Positions 10,639 to 33,310 of a DNA stretch of 64,000 nt are shown one piece after another. Both the position numbers and the translations under genes were made by a program. The notes under the pieces were generated by a model, which saw only the letters and a program-made list of their open reading frames with translations, was not told the origin of the DNA and did not search any database. Each line of letters begins with the position of its first letter. The stretch's first letter is position 1. The DNA is from Lepidodermella squamata (taxonomy: Eukaryota; Animalia; Gastrotricha), in contig JBLDXI010000020.1 in assembly GCA_047495785.1 (NCBI GenBank), positions 2,728,001-2,792,000 of the forward strand, given 5' to 3'.

Positions 10639-13600
10639 ATGGCCAGAAAGAAGCAGGAGGCACAACTGCAGGTTGAGTTGGATACACAGGAGCAATGGGA
10701 CGATATGCTTTCGAAAGAAGGCCTAATCGGTTGGAACTGTAACTACTAATCCCAACCAAGTAATTTACCTTCTGTTTCAATTAGTCGTCGATGTGTATCA
10801 AGAGTGGTGCGGACCGTGTACATCAATGGTTGCGAATTTAAGGAGATTAAGGAATGAGTTGGCTGGAGATGAATTGCTGAAATTCGCTGTGGTTAGTTTG
10901 GCTCTGGAGAGGCTGATATTCGAAAGAATAATGTTGTTAATCATTTTCCCAGGGCAAAGCTGATACCGTTGACGCCCTTGAAAAGTACCGGGGTAAATGC
11001 GAGCCATGCTTTCATCTATATGCGGTGAATTTCTATTCTAAATAATTAATGCTGAATTGAGTTTCAATGTTCTTCAAGGGTGGGCAGCTGGTCAACATTG
11101 TACGTGGAGCGAACTCGCCTTTGTTGATGCGGTTGATTGTTGACGAGTTAAATAAGGAAAAGAAAGTTCTTGCCGGCGAAGCAGAGAGAACTCATGTATG
11201 TGTTGAATCAATTGCTTTCAAATTCATTCATGCATTGTGTTGACTTTCAGTTCATTGATCCTGTTATCGCTGCTCAAGAAGCTGCTCGCCTTGCTGAGAA
11301 AGCAGATGAAGCTTTAGATAGCCAGGGTAAGCCATTTTTGAACAATTTCGGCTGATGAAAATGCGGTAATGTGCCAGAGTCTAAGCCAGCATCACATTCG
11401 GTGATGGAGGGTATATACATAATTGAATTATGCTATTTATTTTTATTCAAGTTATCACAAAAACACGTTATTTGCAAGGAGAGCTTAAGAAAGCTAATCC
11501 AAACTAAAATATTCAACACCATTTTATTATTTTCATAATTTTCTCACAAATTACTTGCCTGATGTATATAGAATACTTCAATCTCGAAAAGAGTAAGTTT
11601 TAATTGGGTAGCATTACGGCTATAGATTTTTATAAATCCGACACTCGGTTATAAGCCATAGTACACTTCCATTTATTTGCTATTTCTCTAGGGAGTATTA
11701 TTTGCTCTTTGACTCTATTTAATCATATTTCAGATTCGCAATTGAAGGAGGTTTCGATCGCTATAATCAAGCCGAACGTTTTCACCAGTGGAAAAGTCGC
11801 AGATGCAGTCCAGATGGTAACACTTTTGTTCCCAAAATTGGCATTGCCTAACTTTCAATAATGTAACTCAGATCAGCGACAGATTCGAAGTGCTGGCAAA
11901 ACAGGAATTCACGTTCAGCGAAGATTGGATCAAAGAGTTTTACGCTCATATTGAGAGTGAACCCATTTTCGAGGAGTTGATTGAATTCATGACATCTGGG
12001 CCATGTATGATCATGGTTTTAACCAACGCTTCGGGCGATAACGTGTGCCAAGAGTTTCGCGATTTTATCGGTCATAAAGACCCAAACATCGCCAAACAGG
12101 AAAACCCCGACAGTCTGCGTGCTCATTTCGGTAGCGATATGGTAAAGAACGGCATTCATGGCAGTGAACCAACGGAAGCTTCAAAGTATAATCAAAGATT
12201 TTAACATCTGAGTGAGGTCTATGATATTTTTCCGCAGGGAAACTGCTTTGGTCGTTGCCTTGATGCCTGACTTGGTCATTCCGAAACGACCGCCAAAGCC
12301 GCGCCTGATGCAGTTCGCAATCGTTGTGCCGCCTCCTGATCTGGAACATGCTGAGCTGATCAAGAACAGACTTGAAGGCCACGAGTTTCGCATTCTTCGT
12401 TCGGAAGAAATCGTCATGTCAGAGGAGATTTTCGAAAAAGTATTCGATCACATGAGGCGAGACGATATCGAAGAATACAGTAGAATGCACAAAATCTACG
12501 TCAACAAGTTTGTGAACTGAACATTTTACATTATTTACTCAAAATCATGTTTTACAGCGGCCCGAGTCACGTCTTTGTCGTTGAAAAGCTGGAAGGCATC
12601 CCTCAATGGATTGAAATGTTCGGCCCACATGACGTTGCGCAAGCTCATGCCACCGCACCGGATTCTCTCGTAGCTCACTTTTACCCTGCCGATGGCGAGA
12701 TCACGAAAAGTTCGATTCACTTCGCAATGCTGCCGAGCCACGGCCGCCAAGACGCGTCTTTGCTCCTTCGCCATCTCGATCAGGTTAAGCCTATTGCTAA
12801 ACCGGAATTCACCATCGCAGCTATCAAGCCTGATGCTCTTCTTCATCGAGGTAAAAAATCTCAAGCTTTGATTCAAGTTAATATAAATATTTCTCCATTA
12901 AGATGACATTTTGCAACGGATTCACGAAAGCGGTTTCCAAATTATCGATCGATTGGAGAGAAAATTAACGCCCGAATTGGTTATGCGTATGTACGTCAAT
13001 CACAAGGGCCAGGGCTATTTCTCGAAAGTTATGGACAACTTGACCAGTGGACCGACCATGTTTATGATTCTTTACCGAGAAGAAGCTATTCACGGCTGGA
13101 GAACTGTCATGGGTTTGCCTCCTTTTCATCTATTCTATTCATTGAAAATTATCTTTTTCTTTAGGCCCGAGCGACCCTGAAAAGGCCAAAGCCGAGGCTC
13201 CTGACAGCCTACGAGCCCTCGTTGGGCAAGATATCGTAAGAAACGCAGTTTTTGGCGCCGATAGCGCAGGTGAAGCTACTCATCTCTTGCGTCTAATCTG
13301 GGGCCAAAACGCCGAAGTAACTGAAGATGGCCGTTTGGAAAAGGCCACGCCCATCCCATCGCGACCTGGCAGCGGCGGCCAGGGCACTGCTACTCCGACT
13401 CCAGCTCAACCTGTGGCTCCGGCCGAGCCGGAACCAGCCGCGGCTGCGGAGCCACCAAAACCATCAGGTGAACTAGCTAAATCGCCTACTCCTGTCGAAA
13501 AAGCCCCGACTAACACTCAGAGTGAAAAGCACGTTAGTGATCTTAGCAGTAGTGATAAACCGCCTGCACCGCCCTCGAAAGAGCCAACGCCTATTCCGAC

Positions 13601-13782
13601 ACCGCCTGAGATCAAACCAGTCGCAACGCCTGTTGAGGTGAAAGAAAAAACTAACGCCTCAGAAGTGAAAATTGTGGCAACGCCAACTCCTCCCGAGCCT
13701 GTCAAAGAGAAAACAAAGGTCGAAGAGGCGAAACCACCTGCGAAATCTGAGCCAGCTCTTACTAACACCGTAGCCAAAAAAC
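10639..13782 (+). CDS. NME8: Thioredoxin + three NDP-kinase domains (NME8/TXNDC3-type outer-arm dynein intermediate chain) + Pro/Glu/Lys linker; N-terminal part of a predicted fusion with the annexin
   Basis: Spliced model MARKKQEAQLQV...VVDVYQEWCGPC...KYRGKCEPCF (Trx); NDK1 AIIKP..FMTSGP..PDSLRAHFG..KNGIHGSE; NDK2 ..PDSLVAHFY; NDK3 AAIKPDA..LTSGP..PDSLRALVG..RNAVFGAD. All introns GT-AG and in phase. If unspliced it would stop at 13799. Confidence 0.9.
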
Positions 13783-13905
13783 GTATTGAACTAACATAGC
13801 CTCCTTAAGTTCGCACTATAATTTCAATTAATTTGCTTAATCACCTATAATTTTTTTAGTTTTTTAATTATTTAACAATTTCTAATAATTTTTTGCAAAT
13901 TTCAG

Positions 13906-15990
13906 AGCCTGATATTCCTACAATTGTTGCCCACGAAAATTTCGACGCGAAAGCTGATAGCGAGGCCTTGTATCGCGCTATGCAGGGCGTTGGAGCCGAT
14001 GAGGATAAAATAACGTCGATAATGACGCGGCGGTCGTGGCAGCAGAGGGTTCAGATTGCGCACAAATTCAAGGAACTCTACAATTTGGACTTGATTGAGA
14101 CGTTCAAGGGCGAGGCGCATGGCAATTACGAAGATCTCGTTGTTGCGCTGTGCCGCGATCCAACCGCCCAGGCGGCTCATAACTTGAACCAGGCGATGAA
14201 AGGCCTTGGAACTGATGAGGATGGATTGATTGAAGTCATCTGCACCACGCCCTACCACGAACTGGAAGCTATCGAAAAGGAATACGAAAAATGTAAAAAA
14301 GAAATCAATTTAAAATTAGATGTGCACAACCTAAATTTAGGACTCGAGCACTAAATTTGAGGCTTCGGTTTCTTTTTTTTTAGATTTTTCACGCCTCTCC
14401 TATAGAATCTAAATTTTTTTTCGATTCGTTTGATTCCAAATATCGATTTTACAAAATCGGTGATTTTCCGATATTAGAAGTCAGCGAACAAACATTCGCT
14501 AGAAAGCAAAATTTAGTGCTGGAATCTCAATTTTGATGATGTTCCGTAGACCCTTTATTATTTACATTTTAAATTTCAAAATCGAAAATTAAAGGTCGCA
14601 AGAATCGTAAATTGGAAATCGCTAAAATTTAAAAATTTCAATTTCAAAGATTTTTAAATTTGCAAAAATCTGAATTAAAAAAAACTAATATTTCAATGAA
14701 ATTTTCAAAAATAATTATTCTCATTGTTTTCAGTGTTCGGGAAGACTTTGGTCGCAGCGGTTACGGACGATACGAGTGGCCCGTTCCGTGATGTCCTCAT
14801 TAAGCTTCTGAATCGCAAGGAGCTGTCGAATGCCGTCGATCCGGCCGCTGTGAAAAATGACGCCAAACACCTCCACGAGGAAATAGGCAAGGGAGCTAAA
14901 GAAGGCACAGCTGCTTTGACCAATTTGATGGCCGAACGATCTCATCCTCAACTTGCGGCCATCTTCGACGCTTACAAGCAAGATCATGGCAAAGATATTG
15001 AAGACGTTATCCACTCTTCATTTGAAGGGGACGTTAAGGACGCCTATCTCGCCGTTGGTAAGAAAATTTCAAAATTAGATTGCAATTTTATTATAAAAAT
15101 GTTTAATTCAGTTGGAACTGTTCGAAATGTTGCGGCATATTTTGCCAAGCGCCTGCGAGCGTCGACCGAGGGAATGGGAACGCGGGATAACCAGTTGATC
15201 CGCATTTTGGTCTCCCGATCTGAGATCGATTTGGAAAATATCAAGAAGGAGTACGAAAAGTTGTACAAAGTGCCGTTGTTGAAGCACGTTGCGGATGATA
15301 CAAGTGGTGACTACAAGCACGCGCTTGTCTCAATCATCACTGGAAACAATGCCAATCTCAAAGGTGAGGATACTTATATTCAAAAAAAATTGAAATTTTC
15401 AGAATTTGAATTTTTAAACGTTCAACTTTTAAATTCTAAAAATTAAAAAATTGAAGTTTATTTATTTCATGAATTAAAAAAATAAATGAAACCTAATTTT
15501 AATTGATTAATCGATAAAAAATTGAGAAAGTTCAAAAAGCTCTTAATCTATACCAATTTGGTGGAATTTTTCCCGAATTAATTTGGCATTAAATTATTTA
15601 ATGGTTTGAATCTGATCTAAATTGCCACCCTGGTTGGATAAAATACGAATAGGTCGTGTTGTTGATGTCCCTGCAAAGAGCCCATCACCACCCCCTAGCA
15701 CCAACTTGCCTCGGCCACCTTCTATCCCGGCCTCGCCCGTGCCGGAACCGACTTCACCTAGAAAGCCGCCGAGTCGCACTAATAGCAAGGCGAGTGTTAA
15801 AAGCGGCTCTGGGGCAACGCCGGCTGCGAAACCGGCTAGTAAGGAGCCGACTACGCACAGCCGACGCGCGTCAAACGCCTCGGTTAAAAGTCAGCAATCA
15901 GTCGGCGGTAGCACTAAAGCTGCCCCGGCGGCGGCGGCGGCCAAACCGCAACCGGATGACGATGAAGAGGCTAAAACCGTCGATGGTTAA
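13906..15990 (+). CDS. Complete four-repeat annexin core + Pro/Ser/Lys-rich tail; predicted C-terminal part of the NME8-annexin fusion
   Basis: Exons 13906-14292, 14734-15057, 15112-15363, 15653-15990. Repeats with AMQGVGADE, AMKGLGTDE, EGMGTRDNQLIRILVSRSEIDL, DDTSGDYK. No ATG of its own before repeat 1. Confidence 0.88.
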
Positions 15991-17294
15991 GGTAGACCGA
16001 AAAAAACAAGATGAATCATCACGCTGACTTCCCAGATTCGGTTTATCATTTTTCAATTTTCCGGAGTTTCATCAATTTTTCTATTGTTTCTTTTGCCCAC
16101 TGAGTTGCATTACGTTAAATACCTATTATTAGCTACGAAATAATTTTTGCATTTGCTTCACTGGTTGTTTAAAATGTCTCTTGACTCCAAATAATTATAT
16201 TTTTCTTTATTTTTTCAGCTTGAAGATTTCAATCGCAATGGAAATGGAGAGCGATGCCTGATGGATCAAAATCGAACGATTTATAATGCACAAATTATTA
16301 GTTTTGGAATGATATTAATATTTTTTTTCAATTCATGTTTTACTTCAAAAAGTACCGTTTCTGTGATACTAAAAATAATTGAGAAAAAAAACGAAAAAAA
16401 AGTATGAAAAAATGATAATTTTATAAAAATGTTGTGCGTATATTATTTATAGTTTTATTCAATTTTAAAAACCTGAATTATTGATCGCAAAAATAATGAT
16501 AAAAAAAATAAAACAAAAACAAATTTATCTGGTTTTGTTGTTCATTGTTATTGGGAACAATAGGCACGGTGTGATTCGGCGATAATGACTGGTACACCGG
16601 TTCGCACTGAAGTGGGCGGATTATTGTGGGCACCCACCCGTATTACGCCGCGCCTCGAGGCTGGTTCACGCGGTTAATCCACGCTGGGCGCTAAATAATG
16701 TTAACCAATAAGTAGTGCGCGCATTTAAGCTGTTTGTTTGCGACGAACACCGCCCGTTGCGCACGAAAAGACGGTGTTGACCCGGCTCAGGAACTCCAAT
16801 CCGTAAAAGCGACCTGTGAACTTTAACGCACAGACGAAAGCGCGCGCGCGATTACAAAACAAGTGACTTATTATCATTTTATTCATTTATTCCTTCTTTC
16901 TTTTGTTCTTGATATAAAATTCGATGAGAAAAATTTACACAACGCTATTATAATTCTGAACCATGAAACGAGAGACAAAAAATCAAGGTATTATATTGCA
17001 AATTCCGTCCTGTTGATGAAAAAAAGAGAGACATTCTACAGCAAAATTTTTTACATACAATATAATCATCTTATTGTACACAGGAAAAAATTGAGCAATT
17101 GATGGTGATATGCTTGATATAAGCTCAACAAAAAAATTTGGTCACGCAGTGTTGTTTATGGAATTTTTTTTCAGCAGGTGGACACACACACAAACAGTCA
17201 CGCAAAATAATCGAGACATGTAAACACACCCTGTGGATGAAATAAAAAACATAGAGATCGAAGTGATGAAAATTGAGGTGGATTTGCTATTTCG

Positions 17295-19990
17295 TTAACA
17301 CGTGTTGTCGTTGCTGTTGTTGCGTTCAAACCCGATTTCAGCCATTTTCTTGAGAAATTGGGTCATTTTCGCGCGAACGACTTCAGGCAGATGCGCGTGG
17401 CTTTCGTAGGTCTGCGAGACGCCGTTTTCATCCGTAACCTCCAGCGTCCGATCGCTGAAATATTGAACCCGGCAGCCGGTGAGGAATCTCACGACAAACA
17501 GGGTGCCGGAAGACTCGGGCTCCGCAGTCACCCAGCCGATGCCAGGGAAGAAATTCTCCTTGCCCATCGCGGTTGAATTCGGATCTCTAGACAGCGATTT
17601 CGCCCGCCTTAACAACGGATTTGTCCCGCCAGACTCAGACTGGGCGTCACTTCGACCCCGGCTTGATCTTACAACAACAGGCGACCCGGGTACTAACGAA
17701 TTTTTCTCTTCATGCACCTCGCTGTTAGTCGCCATTGAATTTGTTGATGAAATCATGTTCATAACAGACATAGCCCGGCTTCTTTTCGAACGATTCACCC
17801 CGGACGAGGATGAGCCGAGACGACGGCCGCTTTCCATAGGGAAAACGAGGTCTTCATCCAACCGGTCTCGAATCGCGCTTTCAACCAGCATTTTTTCGAG
17901 TTCAATCGCCGAATTCCTCACGGCCTGGGCGTCGCGGAATAACGGCCGCCGCGCCTCAGGTATCAACTCTTCAGAATCCTTCGAATCTCGCGGTTGAATC
18001 AACATCACCGCTTTTGCCGTGTCCTCTAAACGGATAGAACCGTCAGCCGTGAATCGAAAAGTGACGCCAACTCGTGGGAACTCAACAACGCAATCGGTTA
18101 AAGTTTCCATGAGGAAACATCGAACGTAATGGCCGTTTAGTAGCGTGTTAATGATGACTTTCGGCGTTGTTTGCCGGTGAAATTCAACGATATTCGCCGC
18201 AAATCTGTACATGCCGAACAAACTTCGCCGCATAGTGGCGTATGTACAAGACCTAGGCGCTTTGGCTAACGCATTTCGAGGGATGTCTTCGATTCTAGTC
18301 GCTCGATCTGCTAATAATGGGACCTGCTCGGGCCGGCTGATCTTCGCGATGGTGATTGTCTCGCCATCTGGAGAAATTTCAACAACCTCAGTGATATGAA
18401 GCCCGCCATCATCGACCTTCTCAACAACCACCGTTCCAGACTCCAAAATACTGAAAGTAGCGTTTTCTAACGGAGCTCGACACGGCTCTAGCCTCCTGGT
18501 ACACAACTTTGGCGGCCGGCTTGAGCTGGCGACTGATGACGAGGCATTTGTCTTACAGGGCGAGCTAGTCGTGCTTGGAGCTGGTCTTGAGCTGAAGCTT
18601 TGAGTTGATCGGAAAATGTTTTCCGAGCCTTGAGATCTATGCTGTTGTTGTTGTTGTTGCTGTTTTTCTTGCTGTTGACTTGAGCTTAGATATCTTCGGC
18701 TACTAGTAGGCGATGACTGAATTGAGGAAGCAACATCGCTCTCGGAAACTGGGGCTAGGCCTGGATACCGAGTGACTTTGGTATTTCGCGGTCGGTACGG
18801 TGAGCTGACTGAGGCTGGTTGAATGTTTATTAGTGGCGCGCGTAGAGGCGGTGGATTGCAGCCTGATGACGTTGTGGATGTTAACAAAGTCGAATTAGGC
18901 CGGCCTGAATCCGTCGAATCGTTCAAAATTCGTGAGGAATTTCCTTGATAGCCAGTTGATCGTAAAATAAAGGGATGAAGCCGAATTTCTAATAAAATAA
19001 TCAAAATAAATGTCATTCAATTCAAAGAAAATATTCATTACCATCTAATCGAAGCCTTTGATTAGGATTCTGGCGTAAAAGTTTATCAATAAGATCAGCA
19101 GCGTCATGAGGGACATTGCCCGGAAGATCGTAACTTCCCCTTCGAATACGATCAAAGGTCGTCGGAATTGAGTCAGAGTCAAAGGGACACCTGCCCACAA
19201 GGAAGCGATACAAAATGCAGCCCAAGCTCCAAACATCGCATTCTTGACCGTGCATATCGCGGCTAACAAATTCGGGCGCCATGTAATTCGGCGTTCCGAC
19301 CAAGGTATTATGAACGCCGCCAACACGGCAAGCTAAACCGAAATCGCCGATTTTCTAAATGAATCAACGAGTAGAAAAATGTTGCATTTGAAGGAACTCG
19401 ACTTACCAGATGCAGATCTTTGGTCACCATTATGTTATTTATTGACAGATCTCGGTGCATTATGCCTTTAACATGCAAATATTGCACGCCAGCAACAATT
19501 TGACTGAAGAAATCGCCGACTGAACAAAGCATCATATAAAAAGAGCTAATGATATTCGCAATCAAACAAACCTTCTTTCTCTGATAGATTCCTTCCCAGT
19601 TTCTTTAGATACGACGTCAAATCACCATTTTCGCAATACTCCAGAACGAAGTATATCTTATCAGAATCTTCGCCTCTATCGATAAACTATGGGAATAAAG
19701 CAGAATACTAAACATCTCCATCGGAAAAAATGTAACTCACTTTGACAATATTCGGATGAGAAAGTTCACTGTGAATCTTGTACTCATTAGTCACACGCAT
19801 CCGCATATCATCGGATGACAGTTTCTTCTTCTCGATCTACAACGAGAGAAATGCATTAACAAACCAATAGACAGAAGCATCAAATACATACCACTTTGAT
19901 CGCGACAGTCCGCCCAGATGAGTCAGTGGCACTGAAAACCTGGGCAAATCCGCCCTTCCCGATGGCCTGTCCCAATTGAAACTTAGGCAT
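17295..19990 (-). CDS. PLK4: Polo-like kinase 4 (SAK)
   Basis: Spliced kinase MPKFQLGQAIGKGGFAQVF..VAIK..HPNIVK..HRDLSINN..KIGDFGLA..GTPNYMAPE; DSTDSG degron-like motif; cryptic polo box (RRLEPCR..ATFSILESGTV, TPKV) and C-terminal polo box (FFPGIGW). Confidence 0.88.
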
Positions 19991-20279
19991 CGGGGCAGAT
20001 GTTGTTTGTCAACAGCAAATCGTTAGAATATTAGACGAGGATCCGCTTACTTTTTAAAAGAGCTAAGAGCAAAGAAAAGGTTGAATGACATAGCATACAT
20101 CATCGGCCAAGTTGAGTTGTTATCATTTGGGTATAAAATAGCAAAATATCGAATAGCGCAGCCGCAGTCGAGCGTCGGTAACAATAGTGTTGGTGGTAAC
20201 AAGAGTAGTAAGTTCTATCAAGTGAAGTACTCAACAGAAGAAAGAAGATGGTTAGCAACTGGTTGCAAGTTGTAGCTGA

Positions 20280-20293
20280 GTTGTAATGACAAC
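20280..20293. promoter_or_regulatory. X-box (RFX) motif upstream of PLK4
   Basis: GTTGTAATGACAAC, a 14-bp imperfect palindrome like the X-box consensus GTTGCCATGGCAAC, about 290 bp upstream of the PLK4 ATG. Confidence 0.45.
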
Positions 20294-22656
20294 CTTTGAA
20301 CCTTTGGAGATAAAGTCATTTGATGCAACGAATCTAGAAATTTATTATCAGCATTATGCCAGCCACAACATAGCGGCAACCGAGGGAATTATAAAGTAGC
20401 CAGCAATAGAATTTCCTAGCGGTAACAAGATTTGTTTCATGTTACAGCAAATCTGGATCAAGCAAAATGGGACATTAGGTTTGTCAGATCAGCTTTAAGA
20501 ATAAAGTCATGCCAAGATTTCATAACAGATTACGAACACCGCGAGATTAAAGGCTTTAGCCGCTCGCGTATAACCCTACTTCGGTATAACCCTAACCCTT
20601 CGCTTCTCCCAACTTTTCCAAATTTCCCGCGCGGCGGCTAATTTTTGAGATAATGTGTGCGTAAAATAAAAATCAAATTATATATTTTATTTTTGCTGAA
20701 CTGCACATTTTATGTAATTAATATACTCGCAAGGTAAAATGAAGAAGCGGTTAATTACTCTCATCAGCGAAAAGTTATAAGTTCCAAATAACTGTCTACG
20801 CGTTACGTTAGTCGCTGACGCCGTGACGCGCCTGTCGCCACCTGCTTCCTGCACATTTGTATCTGTTAGCTGATTCGTTGGGACATATTGCCGTTTATAG
20901 TGGGTGTTATGCCCAGGCGCTAGGCTTCTTCGAACGTTTTTTCTTCTCTCTCGACTCGAGAACTCTGCATCCTGCGACAATACCGGGATTTATTATTTTG
21001 TTGATTACACTTGGAGTTTACCTCGCAAAGTGTTATTTTAATTTACGCTGTCAACTCATTATAAAAGTTTTGGATTTTGGTCATTTACATTCGGTCTTCG
21101 GTTTTGCGTTGCGAGTTGAATCCTTCATCGTTCCACTATTCGATATTCGATAAGTCGTGATATGTCTTAGTGAGCGCTTTCCTTCCCGTCCCTGATTTGC
21201 TCCCATTGTGTGATTTTTGAGCGTTTCAGATAATATTTCATGCTTTTCAATTCTTAAAAAAAATCAGAATGTTCAAGTGATCACACTTTGTTTCTTTTTT
21301 CTCTAAGCTAGCCGATTGCCAAACTATAAGGATATTATCTATAAATCAGTGATCACCTGCAAGAGTGGTAATAAACGCGCACGCCGTTGGTTTTTTATAG
21401 ACAGGCAGAGTATTTAGGGTATAGGGTATTGAACTCGCAGCCCGTCTTCATCGTGCGGTGGGATTTGAGCTGACTCTGATCAACGGGGGAGTTCACCCGT
21501 CAGTGAATGCGAGGCTTGATAGCATAATTATCATACTAAACGGACATTTTTGCTGATCGAAATTGTGCGATAATTTTGTTGTCGGCCGTTTGACAAAAAG
21601 TTTCTGATCAAATCAAGAAAAGGCTTTCCATTATTTTTGCCAATTGCCAATATTTTTTCATTTACGCTGTCATATAAAAAAGAGGAATTGCGTATTAATT
21701 ATCAAGCGCCAGCCGCTGTTTTTCTCAAGAAATATGCATACATTTAATATGAAGCGTTTTTTTGGCGTGGGTCTCAGATATTTTTAGCGTTGGTGCGCAC
21801 ACGTTCGCTCATCTTAATTATTGCATTTTTTCTTTAGAATAGAAAAGTATGTTCAGAGTTATTTTAGCCCGGGCTTGCGTAACTTGGAAGTTGTCGAATT
21901 CGAACAACTTTGACCGGCTTTCGCCGTAATCTTGGGCCTGACATTGAATATTGAATATTAATTACCACCAAAATTTCCGTTTTTTCTTTCAAAAATTCAG
22001 GATTCAGGCTACTGAAATAAGGGCTTAAAAACGGGAATAAACTAAAAATGGATGCCATCAGTTCTGAAAAGAGACATCCGCTAACAATTTACTTGATTTA
22101 ACCATCCGGTTCTTGGAACGTCTATGATCAACGTTATTCTAAACTAATGTCACTCGATTATACTTCACATAAACCAGGCGAAAAAAGTGAAGAATTGAAA
22201 TATTAGAAATCAAAATACGCATCTTGAGGTTGTTAAAATCTTCATTTTATTCTTGGTACCAATCCGAATGTTGAACGGGCCGTGATATCAGGTCGTTAAT
22301 TTTTTTCCACAAGCTTTGCGTGTCGCCTTACACATCATGCTTCGAATCTCTTATGAGTTCGTTCGAATTTCTGATGTAATGAGTATTGATAATTTCCTTA
22401 AAATAATTGTTCCTAGCTCTACTTCGGTCACGTAAAGTAAAAAAGTGTCTATCCTTGATAGATTGATGCTCGTAGCCGATAGCTTCTTAATAAATTTCTC
22501 GAAGTTTTACTTCGGTAAGGAAAATCGGAAAGCGTTAATAATTAATACATAGTGTAATGCAATTACTCGTCTATTCAATCTTCCATGAACATGTCATTTA
22601 TATTTTCAACTATTTTCTATTTCAACACCATAGGGACTTGAAGTCAAAGAGTGTTC

Positions 22657-25600
22657 ATGAAAGTAAACAAAGGATTACCTCCTCAAGAGCAAAGGTATTT
22701 ACGAGCCAATTCTTATCATCTTATCACGGTCGCGCTATTTTTTATTATTATCCAGAGCCTCATTTTTCTTGCTGCACGCACTAGCTAAGGGTCTACGAGT
22801 CTTTGGGATATTTTGGATTTACGATGTGGCAAAAGTTTTAAATGTTTTCTACTTTGCTGCTCTTATTGCAGTTGGGTATGTTTATTTCAATCTAAATATT
22901 TCAAGTTGAAACGCACATGTTGATATTAATTTAGAGCTGCCGCTTTCTACCTTCCAATCCAGCGGCCATTTACTTACGGTCAGAAATTGACCACGCGGCA
23001 GGCATGGAATGTTTTCTACATCGGTGCTTTTCGGCTCATTACCTTGGTCTTTTGGATCACATCTTTGTCAATTTGCGGTCCTCTAAGGTAAAAATAAGAG
23101 CATTATAATAATGTTCCGTCAATAATTTGAAAATTTTCCAGATCAACTTTATTATGCGAACATTCCGAGACAATAATTCTAGCTACTCTATCAGCTCTTT
23201 TCACTTCTGGTACCCCAGGAAAAGTAGGTTTTTGGTTGTGGTAAAGATCTCTTTACTATTTTTTTCGTACATTTAGTTCCGAGGCGCGTTTTGTTTCGTT
23301 GGAGCTTTCATCTCAATATTGTTGATCGATTATGACAGCGAGGTCACTCCAACACCTGATTCCGTCTCGCCTAGTAATTTATCTAGAAATGTATTAGAAA
23401 AATCCTATTGAAATTATTTTACAGCTCCCACTTCGTCTTGGATCGGAAGTGTTTTCAACACTGTATTTGGATTATCGGACCACAAAGCCGGTGTTGTGCT
23501 GTTAGGCTTTACGATGTTTTTAAACGCAATTTGCTCACATTTGGAGAGGAGAATCGCCGTTGATGTCGGTGGCTCCAAACGTTTGAACGCTCTGGTCAGT
23601 TTTGCAACCATGGTTGTGGCCCTCCCCTGTGCAATCATGGCATACTTCTTCGGAGCAACCCCCTCGGCATACCCTTGGACTTCTTTCGTAATTCCGTTAA
23701 TTTATATTATAACTGTCGCGTTTGTTGGGTGCTACTACGTGGATTCTGTATGTGTTACTCGGCTGCAAGCACCAACCGCTGCTAGAGTCGGCTCGTTAGT
23801 CTCCATGATTTCAGCCATGACCATGACTTTACTCTGGAACCACCCGGTCGCCTGGAAAATCATGAAATCGCACGGTTTAGACGTCGCGAATGTTATAGCG
23901 GATGAACACGCTATGTCAGCCGGTGTGATTTTCGCGTTCGTCCTACTCTGTTTAGCAGTTTTGATGCTAACCTCAACAACCCGGGCATCTCATTGGGATT
24001 TGGTCGGAACAACTCATGACGGCTTGCCGCTGTATAAGGAGGCGCAAATGCAAAAATCGACATTTTCGACGACGCAAATGCTGCGTTCAGCGTTACATCG
24101 AGTGCTCGAGTCGCCGGATTCACGGCGGATATTTTACTTTCTCTGTCTCAATCTCACGTTCACCTTTGTTGAGCTTACCTACGGCTTCTGGACTAACAGT
24201 TTGGGCCTCATTTCCGACGGTTTTCACATGTTTTTCGACTGCGCTGCGCTGGTTTTCGGTCTCATTGCATCCGTCGTTGCTCATTGGAGGCCTACTAAGC
24301 AATTCACTTTCGGGTATGTCTCATTTTGATTGGCCATAAACCTCGCCAGAGATAAAAACTAATGAAGCTGGAATAACTCATTGTACTTTTCCAAACCTAT
24401 TTATTGATTTTTTCGGGTGAAGCTCCTCAACTTGTAAGGTCTCTCCTTTTCAATCGGACTATCACTTTCTTTATTGGAAAAGATAGAACTGAGTCCATAT
24501 TATAAGCATACAAAATCCTAAGTTTATGAAAGCCACCGTTCAAAAATTATTCATGGTTTTCGGATGCATTTTTTTCTTAGTTTACATGCTCCATACCTAT
24601 ACCACCCATGGCCGTCATTCCGGATAACAAAACCTGTTCGTGCCTCGTATGATCAAATGCTCGAAATTAGGGAAATTCTGTAGGCTGCTTTGAAATATAT
24701 TGAAAAAAACTTAACAACGATTTCAGCCTTTGCAAGTAGCAATATTCAAAAGCAGAATCCCGAAAAATGCATCCGAAAACCATGAATAATTTTTGAACGG
24801 TGGCTTTCGTAAACAAGAAATTTCACACGCTTATAACATGGACTCAGTTCTATCATTTCCAATAAAGAAAGTGATAGTCCGATCAAGAATGTGGCCGTAG
24901 AGTCAAGGCAAAAACACCCATTTTTGAACCCCTAAAAAAGTGACCTTCGCGGAAATCGCTGTGGCGTCAAAACCGTTCATTTCCGTACGAAATCCTTTGA
25001 ACTGGTTGTAGTTGAAACCAATCCCCATCAATTACAATAAAAAAATCGGAATTCCATGATGAGCTATTTTGGGTATAGCGCGCGGAAAAACACCCTTGTT
25101 TTACATGTAAACATGTATGCGCCGGTTTCAAAAAGATCCGCCATAATGAAAATTTACGAAAATCGCCAAAAGAATTAAAACTTCAAGTTTCCAATAGGAG
25201 TTTCATCTCTGGTAACTCTATTCTCTATGAGCGCATCTATACACAACTCAGGGCATTTTTTTGTCAATAGCAAAAATATTAAGGAGGACTTTTTTAGTTT
25301 TGTTTTCCGAATATTGACTGTATTTTGAAGTCTTGATTGTTTATTTATGGTATTTGTATTCATATTTTATAGCTATGATCGAATCGAAGTGTTGTCCGGC
25401 TTTGTGAACGGTCTTTTCCTGGTCATTATCGCATCAGCGGTGCTCGTATCTGCAATGGACCGAATTTTCGATCCACCCCACATCAACACCCACCGCCTGC
25501 TATTCGTGTCATTCGGCGGTCTATTCATTAATCTATTCGGAGTTTTCGCCTTCCACAGCGCCATTTTCGGCGGTGAATCCGGCGAAGACCATGGCCATTC

Positions 25601-26228
25601 GCATGGAGGAGGTTCTCATGGCCACTCCCACGGCGGAGTGTCGCATGGTCACTCGCATGGCGGCGGCTCCCACGGCCATTCCCACAACAGCAACATGGAA
25701 GGCGTCTTCCTCCACGTTCTAGCCGACACCTTAGGCAGTGTTGGCGTCATTATTTCGTCATTTTTAATCGCGCAATACGGCTGGTACATCGCCGACCCGA
25801 TCTGCTCGATTTTCATGGCGTGCCTCATCATCGCTAGTGTCATTCCGTTGCTGAAGGAAACAAGCCACGTGCTGCTGCTTCGAGTACCCCGTGATGTCCA
25901 GAAAAGTATCGGTGAAGGCCTACAAAACCTGCTGACTATTGAAGGAGTGCTTTCGTACCGCGATCAACACTTCTGGCGCCATTCTTCGAACGTAATCTGC
26001 GGCGTTGTGCATGTCCAAGTCGCCCCTGACGCCTTGGAACCCCGCGTTACCAGCCGGGTGACAGCTCTTTTCGCCGAATTCGGCGTGAATCGTATGGCTG
26101 TTCAGGTCGAAAAGGAGACTTTCTTCTCCCATATGGCTGGACTAGGCATGACAATCGAAAAGCCGGAAAATTTGAGTGCGAAAGCGGCTGGTTATGACAT
26201 GGCGTTAGAAATGATTAAAACATGTTAA
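22657..26228 (+). CDS. SLC30A5: Zinc transporter ZnT5 (SLC30/CDF family)
   Basis: N-terminal membrane extension (CGPLRSTLLCEHSE, DHKAGV), then SRRIFYFLCLNLTFTFVELTYGFWTNSLGLISDGFHMFFDC, YDRIEVLSGFVNGLFL, a (HGHSHGG)-repeat His loop and NMEGVFLHVLADTLGSVGVI; GT-AG introns in phase. Confidence 0.92.
24453..24883. mobile_element. MITE/foldback in ZnT5 intron, with ~120-bp imperfect inverted arms
   Basis: 24453..~24572 (atcggactatcactttctttattggaaa...aaagccaccgttcaaaaattattcatggttttcggatgcattttt) is the reverse complement of ~24763..24883. Confidence 0.75.
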
Positions 26229-26628
26229 CAAAAAATCCCGCATGAATATAAAGCGTATAATGTAAGACCTCTTGATCTGATTTCGTTATATATATAGTGC
26301 AAAACGAAAGTGTCTAGTGTAACTGCCAATAAGCGTTGTATCTAGGTAACATCAAGAAATAGCTGTTGTCGGAAATTTCTATTTTCATTCAAAGGTAAAA
26401 CGCGGCATTTTTTGGCACTATATCTTCTTCACATTCTTCAAAGCTATAAATTATTATTATTGTCTATCAACTTCATTATGACGCTAAATAATATTATTTT
26501 AATGGGCACCAAAATCTTCGGTGGTTGGACGATGGAAAAACCGAGCAAATAAATATAAAAAAATGTTTTTCGTAATTCATGATTAATTATTTTTTTAGAT
26601 ATTTATTAAAAATTAATTAGGGCAGTGC

Positions 26629-29600
26629 ATGCTTTCGTTTTTGAAGGGCAAAAAGGACAAGGACAAGGCTGGACGGAAGCTGTCGTCCACGTCCGGCCCA
26701 AACGGCAAGCACTCAACCACCGAAGCAGATGAAGCATTAGATGATCACTCTCAACACGAAATTTTGGAGGAAGACGATGAAGTAATCAAACCAGGCACAG
26801 TTTCCAGTCTTGTCAACCAATTTGCGCCCGGTGCGCCCAACTTGCCGCCGCCAGCTACGCTGAAAACGTCAACAGCATCGCTCAAACCGACGCCTAATCC
26901 TAACCCGCCTATTAGACAGACATCAAAACTAAAGAGTATTATTCGAGGAGGTAATTTTCTACTAAAATTTGATCAAAATTGTATGCCTTAAGATTGCGAT
27001 TTCAATTTAAACAAAATTAAGTAAATTTTACGGGAAATTTTCAAAAATACGCAAACCAAAATTCGACGAAAATATTCAAATTTAAGGTGGAAACCCCAGT
27101 TCCCTCAACTTTGAAATGGATTTTCTTAAATAAAAATGGCTCCATTGATACCTAAAAGTGAAAAGTGAATTTTCCAGCTTGCAGATTTAAGATCAAGGAT
27201 TTCTACATCCAAAAATGAAAAAATTGAAATTAAGATGAAAAATCGCGGAGATTAAATTCTTTTTCCTAATTTGTTCTTTTATTTTAATTTGAACTATTTT
27301 TATTCAGACTCGTCAGTTCTCTCCGCTTACGAGCCTCCTGGTGTAGCCGAACAACGTCAACAGCCCAGAATTACAGTCACAGTCACCCGTCCCTCCATGA
27401 TCAAGTCACCCCAGCACAGTTTACTGCAACTCGCCCCGCAAACGACGACGATTATCGGCGGAAACGATGCGCTATCGCCATCTCTTGCGATTTCTAGCAC
27501 TCCTGGTTACATAGTGCTACCACCCTTGCCAGTCCGCGCCTCAGCGATCCGCCGCTTGCCCAGGGGGGATTTCGGTATTATCTTACGACAAGCCGTTACG
27601 TTGACCGTTGAAGAAAACACGCAAAGGCTGTTAGTCCGCGGCGTTGTTTTCGCTGAACCGAATGTTGTCAGTCAAAACCAGCCTCTTACCCTGTTGCCGG
27701 GCGATGAATTGCTCGAAGTCGGCGAAACGTCAGTTATCGGCTGGTCGCGCGATGATATCGTCAATTTATTCCGCCGAGCTAACGATACTGTTGTTCTACG
27801 TTTCCAACAAGCGCCGGAATTTCGAGAAATTTCGCTGAATTTCTTCTCGGACAACGTTTCAGTCTCATCCGATACTAGTCGAGTTAAACGAGGTCGTGGC
27901 TCAGGTATCCGTAGAGCGGATCCTGTCTTGAAAGTTCGTCGCTTCAGCTCAGTTTCAAGTATGGGAAATGACGGAACTGATGATCGAACAAAAGTTTGGC
28001 TCAATCACGAACGCGGTTTTTGTATGGCGAAGCAGATTTCTAACGAATCTGATGATTACGTCACGGTTGAGGTGGACGGGCAACAACTCGGCGTTAGACA
28101 GGCTAATTTGTTTCCGAGAAACCCGCTTGCCCAGAATTTTGTTCCAGATCTATCGCGTTTGTCCTATTTGAACGAACCAGCTTTGTTGAATACGTTGATT
28201 CAACGTTTCGCGAACGGGCTGTGCCACAGTGTGGCTGGAACTTCGTCTTACCTGATCAGTCTCAGCCCGCAGAGACCGATGTATTGCTACTCGGAAAAGG
28301 TTCTGCGAATGTTTAATTGGACTGATTGCTGCGACGAGTTGCCTCACCCGTTCTCGCTAGCTGCCGGGGTTCTGGCGAATATGCAGCGTAGTCGGCAGGA
28401 CCAAACCGTTGCGTTTTTAGGCCTGAGTGGGTCTGGGAAATCCGCCTTAATGCGACACGTTTCCTCCGCGCTGTTGGACCCTAGAGCGACCGCAGCCCCG
28501 TCTGCTATCACATCGAGCCGCCTTAATGCTGCTCTGACTATTCTCGACGCGTTCGGGTCTTGCTCGATCGGCCAGAATACTTGCGCGTCGAGGTACGCCC
28601 TTCTGGTCTCGATCAATTACGACCAGCAGGGTCGGCCGCTCGGGGTGGTTTTATCGCCGAATTTTCTCGACCGCTATCGAGTCACGCAACGGGCTGAAAT
28701 GCCGTTGCAAAGCCAAAATCAACCGGCCTCTCCGACTAGTCTCGATACGTACAGTAATTTCGCGATTTTCTACCATTTGCTGGCCGGAATTTCGGCGGAA
28801 GAAAAGGCTGAGTTGATGCTAGACGCGCCGCAACAGGGCCAGAACCTGCTTCTTGAAATGACTTTTTCGAACCAACAAATGCAAAAGTCTTTCGCGGATA
28901 AGTGGACCTCTGTGACGAATTGTATGGACGAGTTGAATATCAGCGGCGATGAACGGCGTGGCATTTGGCGGACTATTGGTGCCATCATTCATTTGGGCTA
29001 TGCTGGCTACGTGCAGACGCCGACTGGCGTTGGCCAATTCCACCGCGCTGAATCGGCTCAACGTGCTGCTGATTTACTAGGTTTGTATTAATTCAATTTC
29101 AATGCCTGATTGGAATACAAAAAAATGGAAAAATGTAGTGCTCACATTGAGAATGAAAAGAGCCGGTGCGGCCTGATTGGGCAGTTGAAGGTTTAAGAAC
29201 TTACCTGGCGCTAAAAGACAGAGGGGGTTGTAGCAAAAATTGACTCAATCGGCACAATAATATCAACCTGAAATTACGCGCCATTGAAAATGACCGAGTT
29301 AGCATTCTCATGGAGAAAACACCACTGAGGCATGTTTACCGGGTCAAACTACCAGAATAGTGGGGAAAAACCAACAACTTGCAAAATAGCAAACTAGTGC
29401 ACTAGCTACATTTCTTTCTATAGATCAAGTTAAACTGGGGTATTCAACGAAATTTCCTCAAAATACCTGCTTTTGGCTACATTTTTATTAATTTTTATAG
29501 CTCCTTTATTAATTTGTTCTATTTGAATAGGCGTTAAGGTGGAAGACTTGGCGAATGCAATTTTCTCTGCTGCAAAGAATGCGCAGAGTCAAAGCAACCC

Positions 29601-32600: not shown

Positions 32601-33310
32601 AGCTATTCCAAGCGAAGATGATTGATAAGCAAGAGTATATTAAACTCGAAATGCAGATTCGAACGCTCGAGGGTCATCTCCAGCTGGAACGAGTCGAAAG
32701 GGCCCGACTTGAAACCGCCTTGGACCGGGCTAAGCAGAAGGCCGAAACTTTGCAAGAGGCAGTTGCCACCCTCGAGGAACTGCTGCGTAACGAAAGACAG
32801 CGGTCTTCTCGCCTGGAAAAGGACTTGAATGCGGTTACTGAGGAGGCTCAGGATAACGCGAGACGTTTGACTGATGTTGAATCGAAATTATCGGCGCTGA
32901 ACACGGAAGCGTCGCAACTGCAGAAATTATTCGAAGAACGCGAGGAGCAGCTTCATCTTGCCTATCAAAACATTTCCACGATGCAAAAGGCGTTGGAAGA
33001 GAAAGCCTCGTCCTCTGCTGATGAAGACGATGAAGATGAAGAGGAGGATGACGACGATGAATTCGACGACGGCTGCATGTTCGAGGCAATGTCGCAAAAT
33101 AGCGATGTTGAAGATGAAGATGTGAGCGAGAATCTGCGGCAAAACGGTGTCGGAGATCATCGCAATGGCCATCACCACGTGAATGGGAATGGCTTGGCCG
33201 GTAGCGCTGGTACGGTTTCTTACAGTAGTGATAGTGTGATTAATGACGATGGCGGCTCAGACCCTCACATTTCCAACGGTCGGCGACAGGAGGCGCTTCT
33301 TGCCGATTGA
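26629..33310 (+). CDS. MYO18A: Unconventional myosin XVIII (PDZ, motor-like domain, IQ, long coiled coil, acidic tail)
   Basis: Four exons. PDZ (RRLPRGDFGIILR..LLPGDELLEV), DLSRLSYLNEPALLNTL, P-loop GLSGSGKS, ASRY, LLDTPG, WPWWRLYVRIKPL, and MYO18-type DQEEELDEQAGEIQ. Confidence 0.88.

What the first reader, a model, noticed from the sequence alone, without database searches (positions are those of the whole stretch)
10639..15990. Thioredoxin-3xNDK dynein subunit fused in frame to a complete annexin: a possible Ca2+/membrane-sensing axonemal protein
Seen: after NDK3 a ~150-aa P/E/K/T linker ends AAA AAA C|GTATTG (donor 13783). The annexin exon begins TTCAG|AG CCT (acceptor 13905), so C+AG gives Gln in frame. 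The 123-nt gap is AT-rich, intron-like and has no ATG; the annexin ORF's apparent start is TTG and its first ATG lies inside repeat 1. A similar P/S/K tail follows the annexin. Known: NME8/TXNDC3-type proteins are outer-arm dynein intermediate chains; annexins bind phospholipids Ca2+-dependently and are usually stand-alone. Inference: one polypeptide combining redox (WCGPC), nucleotide and Ca2+/lipid modules, perhaps tethering dynein to the ciliary membrane through the flexible linker. Whether such a fusion is already reported could not be checked.
Basis: partly seen in the sequence, partly recalled or inferred. Interest (0 to 1): 0.85.

Follow-up and report, generated by a model that had tools for sequence, protein, structure and literature searches.

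The report
Dynein NME8-like protein fused to annexin
In this small invertebrate, a cilia-motor subunit gene (thioredoxin plus three NDK domains) is spliced in frame onto a complete annexin, a calcium- and membrane-binding module; the joined message is seen in RNA of two organisms, I found the combination described nowhere, and its function is untested.

Summary
Exons 10639-13782 encode a thioredoxin (WCGPC) and three NDK domains, the NME8/TNDK-IC architecture. A four-repeat annexin follows on the same strand. The 123-nt gap is a phase-matched GT..AG intron, and the annexin has no ATG of its own.

RNA-derived contigs (run X1) confirm 11 of the other 13 predicted introns. They also join the two halves in two ways:
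- 13467>13906, a second in-frame donor that drops 105 linker codons. This was not predicted. It looks like the main form and is also present in a diverged relative (X2).

A third joint, 15363>16219, ends the protein just after annexin repeat 4, so the P/S/K tail is optional. All 24 listed coding variants are synonymous.

This genome uses spliced-leader trans-splicing (earlier notes), so a two-gene operon is the main rival. The missing start codon, the two in-frame junctions and their presence in a relative argue against it.

None of the 150 best annexin matches in 1.8 billion proteins carries Trx or NDK, and no paper searched links the families. Axonemal location and a calcium/membrane role are inference only.

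Verdict: a real, expressed, apparently undescribed domain fusion.

The parts
10639..10729 (+). Exon 1 with the start codon ATG at 10639
   Evidence: Translation and splice model. Intron 1 (10730-10784) is not among the joints shown.
10785..11326 (+). Exons 2-5: thioredoxin domain, active site WCGPC at 10805-10819
   Evidence: Pfam PF00085 on exon 2. Introns 2-5 are skipped in X1 contigs at GT..AG.
11734..12185 (+). Exons 6-7: NDK domain 1, catalytic-His context NGIHGSE kept
   Evidence: Pfam PF00334, E 4.9e-22; closest solved chains are NME7-type NDKs and TXNDC6; alignment.
12238..12850 (+). Exons 8-9: NDK domain 2 (degenerate, SIHFA) and the start of NDK domain 3
   Evidence: BLASTP against NDK1 gives 9.5e-07 and against NDK3 1.3e-08. 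The exon pieces alone give no Pfam hit. Introns confirmed.
12903..13330 (+). Exon 10 and the first part of exon 11: NDK domain 3 (His replaced by Phe, NAVFGAD)
   Evidence: Pfam PF00334, E 3.6e-13; alignment; intron 10 confirmed.
13331..13467 (+). Constitutive P/A/E-rich linker, about 45 aa. It ends at the alternative donor CAG|GTGAAC (GT at 13468-69, phase 1).
   Evidence: Joint 13467>13906 in X1 (depth 26.5) and in X2 (99 letters on the shorter side). In frame, G+AG gives Glu. The 4 variants listed here are synonymous.
13468..13782 (+). Optional part of the linker (105 codons), present only in the long-linker isoform. It ends at the donor AAC|GTATTG.
   Evidence: X1 contigs cover it at lower depth, 8-13.5. 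Two contigs ending at 13782 carry the overhang AGCCTGAT. The 2 variants here are synonymous.
13783..13905 (+). Intron 11: 123 nt, 22% G+C, in-frame TAG at 13797-99, no ATG, no AATAAA. Possibly a former intercistronic spacer.
13906..14292 (+). Exon 12: annexin repeats 1-2. It begins 4 residues before the point where a stand-alone annexin core starts.
   Evidence: Pfam PF00191, E 4.8e-30; comparison with the 313-aa annexin P0053.
14734..15057 (+). Exon 13: end of repeat 2 and repeat 3 (Ca2+ motif degenerate)
   Evidence: Pfam; intron 12 skipped in X1; motif scan.
15112..15363 (+). Exon 14: annexin repeat 4 (GMGT...DD site intact)
   Evidence: Pfam, E 6.5e-23; intron 13 skipped in X1; motif scan.
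15653..15990 (+). Optional P/S/K-rich tail exon (111 aa, stop TAA at 15988-90). The acceptor at 15652/15653 is inferred only.
   Evidence: In frame in the model. X1 depth is 10-18, against about 40 on neighbouring exons. One synonymous variant.
16219..16370 (+). Alternative last exon. It adds Ala, then stop TGA at 16221-23, then 3' UTR, giving a protein that ends ...NANLKA.
   Evidence: Joint 15363>16219, GT..AG, 2 X1 contigs, depth 40.9; translation.

Best explanation
Window 10639 to about 16370 (+) is one gene, not two. Its pre-mRNA is spliced so that a thioredoxin + 3xNDK protein of the NME8/TXNDC3/TNDK-IC type continues in frame into a complete four-repeat annexin core. NME8-type proteins are outer-arm dynein intermediate chains of animal cilia and sperm.

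Shown here:
- The exon structure.
- Two alternative phase-1 donors (13467 and 13782) that both join the acceptor at 13906.
- An alternative 3' end.
Together these give four in-frame products of 967 to 1183 aa. The 967-aa form (45-aa linker, no tail) is probably the commonest.

Inferred (about 0.8): the fused message is the main translated product, because the annexin half has no start codon.

Inferred from family knowledge only (about 0.3): the NDK/thioredoxin half anchors the protein in the outer dynein arm. The annexin core sits on a disordered P/A/E/K-rich tether of selectable length. When ciliary Ca2+ rises it binds acidic lipids of the nearby ciliary membrane through the intact type II sites of repeats 2 and 4. 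This would couple Ca2+ signals or membrane proximity to the dynein arm. Linker length and the phosphorylatable tail would be tuned by alternative splicing.

Likely origin (inference): two neighbouring, perhaps operonic, genes merged when donors in the upstream gene's last exon captured the splice acceptor of the annexin gene.
For: Gene model: a single 1183-aa ORF over 15 exons with GT..AG introns, mostly 50-61 nt. Domains as listed under 'parts'.

RNA evidence:
- X1 contigs skip 11 of the other 13 predicted introns, and DNA run X3 skips none.
- Joint 13467>13906, GT..AG, is in X1 (depth 26.5; the upstream exon contig is 34.1).
- The same joint is in X2, a relative with 10 differences in 106 linker letters and 2 in 99 annexin letters.
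- Two X1 contigs ending at 13782 continue with AGCCTGAT, which is 13906-13913.

Both junctions are in frame. There is no ATG between 13783 and 13979. Exon 12 starts exactly where stand-alone annexin cores start. All 24 of 24 listed coding variants are synonymous, including 6 in the linker and 1 in the tail exon. The DNA contig across the junction is identical to the window.

Family knowledge: NME8 = Trx + 2-3 NDK and an outer-arm intermediate chain (PMC8754002, PMC4415241, PMC2978717). A motile-cilia gene, calaxin, is noted elsewhere in this genome (s1-411571, unchecked).
Against: - All RNA evidence comes from assembled contigs, not raw reads. No single contig spans from an NDK domain into the annexin core beyond 106+99 letters, and depths are rough.
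- The 13782>13906 junction rests on 8-letter overhangs only.
- No protein-level evidence exists.
- The genome trans-splices and has operons with gaps of 54-125 nt (earlier notes s1-421510, s1-374160). The 106 nt from TAG 13799 to the acceptor fit that pattern. The loose-end table was truncated, so a leader at 13906 could have gone unseen.
- No fused homologue was found outside the two close organisms.
- Location in the dynein arm and lipid binding are untested. NDK3 lacks the catalytic His.
Confidence: 0.8

Rival explanations
1. Two genes in a spliced-leader-resolved operon. The NME8-like mRNA ends after TAG 13797-99. The annexin mRNA receives a leader at 13906. The observed cis-spliced joins are by-products of processing the polycistronic precursor and make no functional protein.
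For: Earlier notes on this genome report leader trans-splicing and operons with gaps of 54-125 nt. The distance from TAG to the acceptor is 106 nt. The acceptor TTTCAG|AG is of the kind used for leaders. The loose-end list was truncated, with 6 rows not shown.
Against: - The annexin exon has no ATG before 13980. A leader-capped mRNA would start inside repeat 1 and lose helix A.
- Two different donors both land in frame.
- The junction contig depth (26.5) is close to that of the flanking exons (34-47), not a trace.
- The same junction is kept in a diverged relative (X2).
- There is no AATAAA between 13800 and 13905.
- No leader-like loose end at 13906 is among the rows shown.
Confidence: 0.08
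2. A mixed locus. Besides the fused protein, it also makes a stand-alone NME8-like protein of 755 aa, by intron 11 retention or polyadenylation, ending ...KKRIELT. It perhaps also makes an N-terminally shortened annexin. The fusion would then be one regulated isoform among several.
For: The ORF continues 5 codons past the 13782 donor to a TAG, a natural-looking gene end. Annexin exon depth (about 47) slightly exceeds the sum of the two fused forms (about 35-40). Alternative splicing is already shown at the linker and at the 3' end.
Against: Depths from contigs cannot be compared reliably, as itself warns. A retained-intron message would carry a stop far upstream of later exon junctions and would be a likely target for decay, unless polyadenylated first, and no AATAAA is present. 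No such transcript end was reported in table 6, but contigs cannot show ends.
Confidence: 0.25
3. Artefact: a chimeric assembly of the genome or of the RNA contigs, or reverse-transcriptase template switching, joins two unrelated genes.
For: The RNA evidence consists of short de Bruijn contigs.
Against: An independent DNA run (X3) has a 1269-letter contig across 13031-14299 with no difference. The junctions are canonical GT..AG and in frame, which template switching does not produce. The same junction occurs in two runs of two organisms from different studies.
Confidence: 0.02

Closest known systems
NME8 / TXNDC3 / DNAI8 (human), sea urchin outer-arm IC1, Ciona IC3: the 'TNDK-IC' family
   Same: N-terminal thioredoxin domain with WCGPC followed by three NDK domains, then an acidic or low-complexity C-terminal region. 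The family is restricted to animals and choanoflagellates (PMC8754002, PMC4415241, PMC2978717).
   Different: Described members end after the NDK domains or a Glu-rich tail. Here the low-complexity region acts as a linker into a full annexin core. None of the surveyed animal Nme8 proteins is described with an annexin: the word does not occur in PMC2978717.
Annexins with long disordered N-terminal domains (vertebrate A7, A11)
   Same: A canonical four-repeat core preceded by a long Pro-rich disordered region that sets the partner or location of the core (PMC10955470, title and abstract only).
   Different: Here the 'N-terminal domain' is a whole 600-aa multidomain dynein-type protein plus the linker, and the core has no start codon of its own.
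Calaxin (opisthokonts) and LC4 (Chlamydomonas): Ca2+ sensors of the outer dynein arm
   Same: A Ca2+-binding module physically attached to the outer arm that changes motility with Ca2+ (PMC4415241). The fusion would work like these if the inferred location is right.
   Different: Those are EF-hand proteins bound non-covalently to heavy chains. The module here is an annexin, which binds lipid with Ca2+, and it is covalently fused to an intermediate-chain homologue. Calaxin seems to be present in this genome as well (s1-411571, unchecked).
Mollusc Hmw/CFAP97-annexin proteins (Mytilus XP_071159420, Batillaria KAK7504860, Plakobranchus GFO20496)
   Same: An annexin core at the C-terminus of a cilia/flagella-associated protein domain. 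This is a second, independent case of annexin joined to a ciliary protein.
   Different: The partner domain is different (CFAP97, not Trx-NDK), and some have 7-8 repeats. They are annotated only as 'annexin A6-like'. I did not check RNA support for them.
Giardia alpha-giardins (annexin E1 and others) on flagella
   Same: Annexin-family proteins that localise to flagella (PMC3150270, PMC4863580; titles and abstracts).
   Different: They are stand-alone annexins of a protist and are not fused to axonemal subunits.

Membership tests
NME8 / TNDK-IC (thioredoxin-NDK dynein intermediate chain) | N-terminal thioredoxin domain with a CGPC redox site | tested here: met
   WCGPC at 10805-10819. Pfam PF00085 on the exon 2 piece scores 21.4 bits, E 2.6e-4, just under the whole-domain cut-off because only 35 aa were given.
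NME8 / TNDK-IC (thioredoxin-NDK dynein intermediate chain) | Two or three tandem NDK domains after the thioredoxin domain | tested here: met
   Pfam NDK on exon 7 (4.9e-22) and exon 10 (3.6e-13). The middle copy is shown by BLASTP to both others.
NME8 / TNDK-IC (thioredoxin-NDK dynein intermediate chain) | Orthology to NME8 rather than NME7/NME9, shown by phylogeny | not tested
   No full-length NME8 sequence could be fetched, because the spliced protein cannot be given by reference. NDK1 is closest to NME7-type chains and TXNDC6 among solved structures, and no NME8 chain matched.
NME8 / TNDK-IC (thioredoxin-NDK dynein intermediate chain) | Physical subunit of the axonemal outer dynein arm | not testable with these tools
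   Needs fractionation, proteomics or imaging of cilia or sperm.
Annexin | Four annexin repeats of about 70 aa | tested here: met
   Pfam PF00191: two repeats in exon 12 (4.8e-30), one in exon 13 (3.8e-18), one in exon 14 (6.5e-23).
Annexin | Type II Ca2+ sites (GxGT loop plus an acidic residue about 38 positions on) | tested here: met
   KGLGTDE...DD in repeat 2 and GMGTRD...DD in repeat 4. Repeat 1 has GVGAD...E. Repeat 3 is degenerate.
Annexin | Ca2+-dependent binding to acidic phospholipids | not testable with these tools
   Needs a liposome co-sedimentation assay.
Spliced-leader-resolved operon of two genes (the rival filing) | The downstream gene has its own start codon after the trans-splice acceptor | tested here: not met
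   No ATG from 13783 to 13979. The first is at 13980, inside repeat 1.
Spliced-leader-resolved operon of two genes (the rival filing) | Spliced leader found on the downstream acceptor in RNA | tested here: inconclusive
   No leader-like loose end at 13906 is among the rows shown, but 6 rows were not printed and contigs drop rare forms.
Spliced-leader-resolved operon of two genes (the rival filing) | Poly(A) signal for the upstream gene in the short spacer | tested here: not met
   No AATAAA or ATTAAA in 13800-13905, only AATAAT at 13884. The poly(A) signal usage of this animal is not known to me.

The most novel reading that the evidence does not exclude
An outer-arm dynein intermediate chain has acquired a covalently attached annexin, giving motile cilia of this lineage a Ca2+-switchable link between the dynein arm and the ciliary membrane. 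The tether length (45 or 150 aa) would be chosen by alternative splicing. The fusion would have arisen by converting a trans-splice acceptor of an operon's downstream gene into a cis-splice acceptor. Together with the mollusc CFAP97-annexin proteins, it would point to repeated recruitment of annexins into the axoneme.
Probability: 0.25. Interest if true: 0.78.

Novelty: new variant of a known kind. Interest (0 to 1): 0.6.

Why it matters
How Ca2+ reaches and regulates outer-arm dynein is known only through EF-hand sensors (calaxin, LC4). What links doublet microtubules and dynein arms to the ciliary membrane is poorly defined. A natural protein that covalently couples an outer-arm subunit homologue to a Ca2+/lipid-binding annexin would give a concrete, testable candidate for such a link. 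Domain fusions are also classic predictors of functional association, so this one suggests looking for an annexin-NME8 interaction in animals where the two are separate, including in NME8-linked ciliary dyskinesia.

It is also a clean example of how gene fusions can arise in genomes with operons and trans-splicing. The former stop codon and spacer appear to survive as an intron.

The claim is limited. The fusion is shown as RNA in two closely related organisms only, and the function is inferred.

Tried and rejected
1. HMMER scan of 1.84 billion representatives with annexin exon 12. It gave 2842 hits with best identity 40%. The ranking is dominated by multi-core annexins. None of the 150 listed has Trx/NDK similarity (local phmmer; Pfam on 9 long ones). 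Fusions further down the list, or split by gene callers, would be missed.

2. Word-indexed search with the same exon. It returned one 118-aa stand-alone annexin fragment, which was not informative.

3. The spliced full-length protein could not be used as a query. There is no reference for a spliced sequence, and I did not type it. Full-length NME8 relatives and their architectures were therefore never searched.

4. Two metagenome scans. The annexin exon found nothing. The NDK exon returned 80 NDK loci at only 31-40% identity, apparently unrelated single-domain NDK genes, none with an annexin.

5. Organism identification.
- AsnRS is 70-74% identical to many animal phyla alike.
- Plk4 found one relative, an ENA metagenome scaffold. 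It is collinear with window 17-33 kb but has no NDK or annexin within 10 kb.
- The animal stays unidentified.

6. ESM Atlas was busy three times, then returned annexin-only clusters.

7. Rfam on 10000-17400 gave nothing.

8. Six literature searches found no paper describing this fusion.

9. Rejected: a leader-donated ATG. Any ATG placed directly before 13906 would read AGC CTG..., out of frame with the annexin.


Full report
**What is in the sequence**

The stretch 10639-15990 on the + strand can be assembled into 15 exons. The introns are GT..AG and mostly 50-61 nt long; four are longer (123, 289, 407 and 441 nt). The exons read as one 1183-aa frame.

Pfam on the exon translations gives:
- Thioredoxin on exon 2, with WCGPC at 10805-10819.
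- NDK on exons 7 and 10.
- Annexin four times, on exons 12-14.

A degenerate middle NDK copy on exons 8-9 is shown by its similarity to the other two. NDK1 keeps the catalytic-histidine context (NGIHGSE), NDK2 has SIHFA, and NDK3 has Phe in place of His.

The annexin has intact GxGT...D/E calcium sites in repeats 2 and 4, a variant in repeat 1 and a degenerate repeat 3.

After NDK3 comes a 151-aa P/A/K/E/T-rich stretch.
- Donor AAC|GTATTG, with GT at 13783.
- Acceptor TTTCAG|AGCCT, with the exon starting at 13906.
- Both are phase 1.
- The 123 nt between them are 22% G+C, contain an in-frame TAG (13797-99) and hold no ATG.
- The first ATG downstream is at 13980, inside repeat 1.

Compared with a stand-alone 313-aa annexin (P0053), exon 12 begins four residues before the point where that protein's core starts, right after its initiator Met-Ala. 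The annexin here is complete except for a start.

**Is the join real?**

Three public runs hold this stretch. I laid them on 10500-16400.

Run X3 is DNA. Its contigs are unspliced, and one covers 13031-14299 without a single difference, so the adjacency is not an assembly error.

Run X1 is recorded only as 'RNA?'. Its contigs skip 11 of the other 13 predicted introns exactly at GT..AG, which only processed RNA does. Introns 1 and 14 are not among the joints shown.

At the junction in question there are two signals.

1. Two X1 contigs that end at 13782 carry the overhang AGCCTGAT. These are the first eight letters of the exon at 13906, whereas the genome continues GTATTGAA. The only other X1 overhang listed (GTGGGCAG at 11025) reproduces the confirmed intron 3 in the same way, so this reading of overhangs is validated internally.

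- It is carried by an X1 contig of depth 26.5.
- It is also carried by a 205-letter contig of run X2, with 106 letters on the NDK/linker side and 99 on the annexin side.
- X2 comes from a different organism and study. It differs at 10 of 106 linker positions and 2 of 99 annexin positions, so the fused message is conserved in a diverged relative.

Both junctions keep the frame, giving Gln or Glu at the join.

**Isoforms**

The upstream donor removes 105 codons of the linker. Contig depths are 34 before 13467, 26.5 on the short junction and 8-13.5 within 13468-13782. They suggest that the short-linker form predominates. Contig depths are crude, and itself warns against ranking by them.

At the 3' end, two X1 contigs (depth 40.9) join 15363 to 16219. 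This adds one Ala and a TGA, so the protein ends ...NANLKA, like an ordinary annexin.

The P/S/K tail exon (15653-15990) is covered at depth 10-18. Its join to 15363 was not among the joints printed, so the tail is optional and its acceptor is my inference.

The four combinations give 967, 1072, 1078 and 1183 aa, all in frame.

**Selection**

Of the differences between the runs and the window listed, 24 fall in my coding model, and all 24 are synonymous. Six lie in the linker, two of them in its optional part, and one lies in the tail exon. The whole frame, low-complexity parts included, is under purifying selection.

**The main rival**

Earlier notes of this scan say that this unidentified small animal trans-splices 30-33-nt leaders onto its mRNAs. 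They also report operon-like clusters with gaps of 54-125 nt (s1-421510, s1-374160, s1-430905). I did not re-test these.

The 106 nt between TAG 13799 and the acceptor fit that pattern, so 'NME8 gene, spacer, trans-spliced annexin gene' is a serious alternative. Against it:
- The annexin has no start codon.
- Two independent donors are both in frame, which is about 1 in 9 by chance.
- The junction contig is about as deep as the exons.
- The junction is kept in X2.
- The spacer has no AATAAA.
- No leader-like loose end at 13906 was among the rows shown, though six rows were not printed.

I put the pure operon reading at about 0.08. A mixed locus that also makes a stand-alone 755-aa NME8-like protein is about 0.25 and is not exclusive of the fusion.

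The operon pattern is more useful as a clue to origin. The stop codon and spacer of an upstream cistron look as if they were turned into an intron when donors in its last exon captured the downstream acceptor. This is inference.

**What it is like, and what it is not**

Trx + 2-3 NDK is the defining architecture of NME8/TXNDC3 (alias DNAI8), the orthologue of sea urchin outer-arm intermediate chain IC1 and Ciona IC3. The family is restricted to animals and choanoflagellates (PMC8754002; PMC4415241; PMC2978717). The architecture test is met. Orthology by tree and presence in the dynein arm were not tested.

The survey of animal Nme8 proteins in PMC2978717 never mentions an annexin.

Searches for the fusion elsewhere:
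- Among 2842 annexin matches in 1.84 billion representative proteins, the best identity is 40%. None of the 150 best carries Trx or NDK.
- Papers holding annexin together with NME8 or TXNDC3, or 'annexin domain' with NDK or 'thioredoxin domain', do not describe a fusion.
- These searches have gaps. I could not query with the full-length spliced protein, and InterPro was not available.

**How it probably works**

Shown: a message, and by the missing start codon very probably a protein, that joins the two halves through a disordered linker of 45 or 150 residues.

Inferred from the families: the Trx-NDK half places the protein in the outer dynein arm, within tens of nanometres of the ciliary membrane. 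The annexin half binds acidic lipids when Ca2+ rises. The linker length would set its reach. The optional tail, which has an RRAS motif, could add phosphoregulation.

It would then work like calaxin or LC4, as a calcium module on the outer arm, but through lipid binding rather than an EF-hand switch. I give this functional reading about 0.3. Calaxin is itself noted in this genome (s1-411571, unchecked), so the animal has motile-cilia machinery.

**Seen on the way**

Three mollusc proteins among the annexin hits have an N-terminal Hemingway/CFAP97 domain, a cilia/flagella protein, in front of 4-8 annexin repeats. This is an independent case of an annexin joined to a ciliary protein. It is annotated merely as 'annexin A6-like'.

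**Verdict**

The fusion is real at the RNA level and appears undescribed. It is a new domain architecture built from two well-known families, in an unidentified invertebrate and one relative. The function is open.

Noticed in passing
P0027, P0038, P0117 (hits): Mollusc proteins with an N-terminal Hmw/CFAP97 (cilia- and flagella-associated protein 97) domain followed by 4-8 annexin repeats: Mytilus edulis XP_071159420 and many isoforms, Batillaria KAK7504860, Plakobranchus GFO20496. They are annotated only as annexin A6-like. This looks like a second, independent annexin-ciliary protein fusion, conserved across bivalves and gastropods.
   Followed up: partly
window 16540-16860: A G+C-rich island of about 320 nt in the otherwise A+T-rich spacer between the fusion gene's 3' end and the Plk4 gene on the minus strand. 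It has no long ORF and no Rfam match. It could be a promoter/CpG-like element or an undescribed RNA gene.
   Followed up: partly
window 14293-14733 (intron 12): The 441-nt intron holds a repeated element. DNA run X3 depth rises from about 74 to 467, with single-base deletions at 14453-14458 and several contigs that run on into unlike sequence.
   Followed up: no
L001 (ENA metagenome scaffold, 78.7 kb) versus window 17300-33100: A relative of this animal is present in a public metagenome assembly (about 67% nucleotide and 70% Plk4 protein identity). It is collinear for Plk4, a cation-efflux gene and a myosin XVIII-like gene. Collinearity stops at the NME8-annexin side, where the relative has GATA-type genes instead.
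   Followed up: partly
window 4514-9718 (+): Two long tandem ORFs (771 and 804 aa), each with an ANF_receptor ligand-binding domain, lie just upstream of the fusion gene.
   Followed up: no
window 15653-15990: The optional P/S/K tail contains an RRAS motif (protein kinase A type) and several S/T-K repeats. This would fit cAMP-dependent regulation, but it is only a motif match by eye.
   Followed up: no
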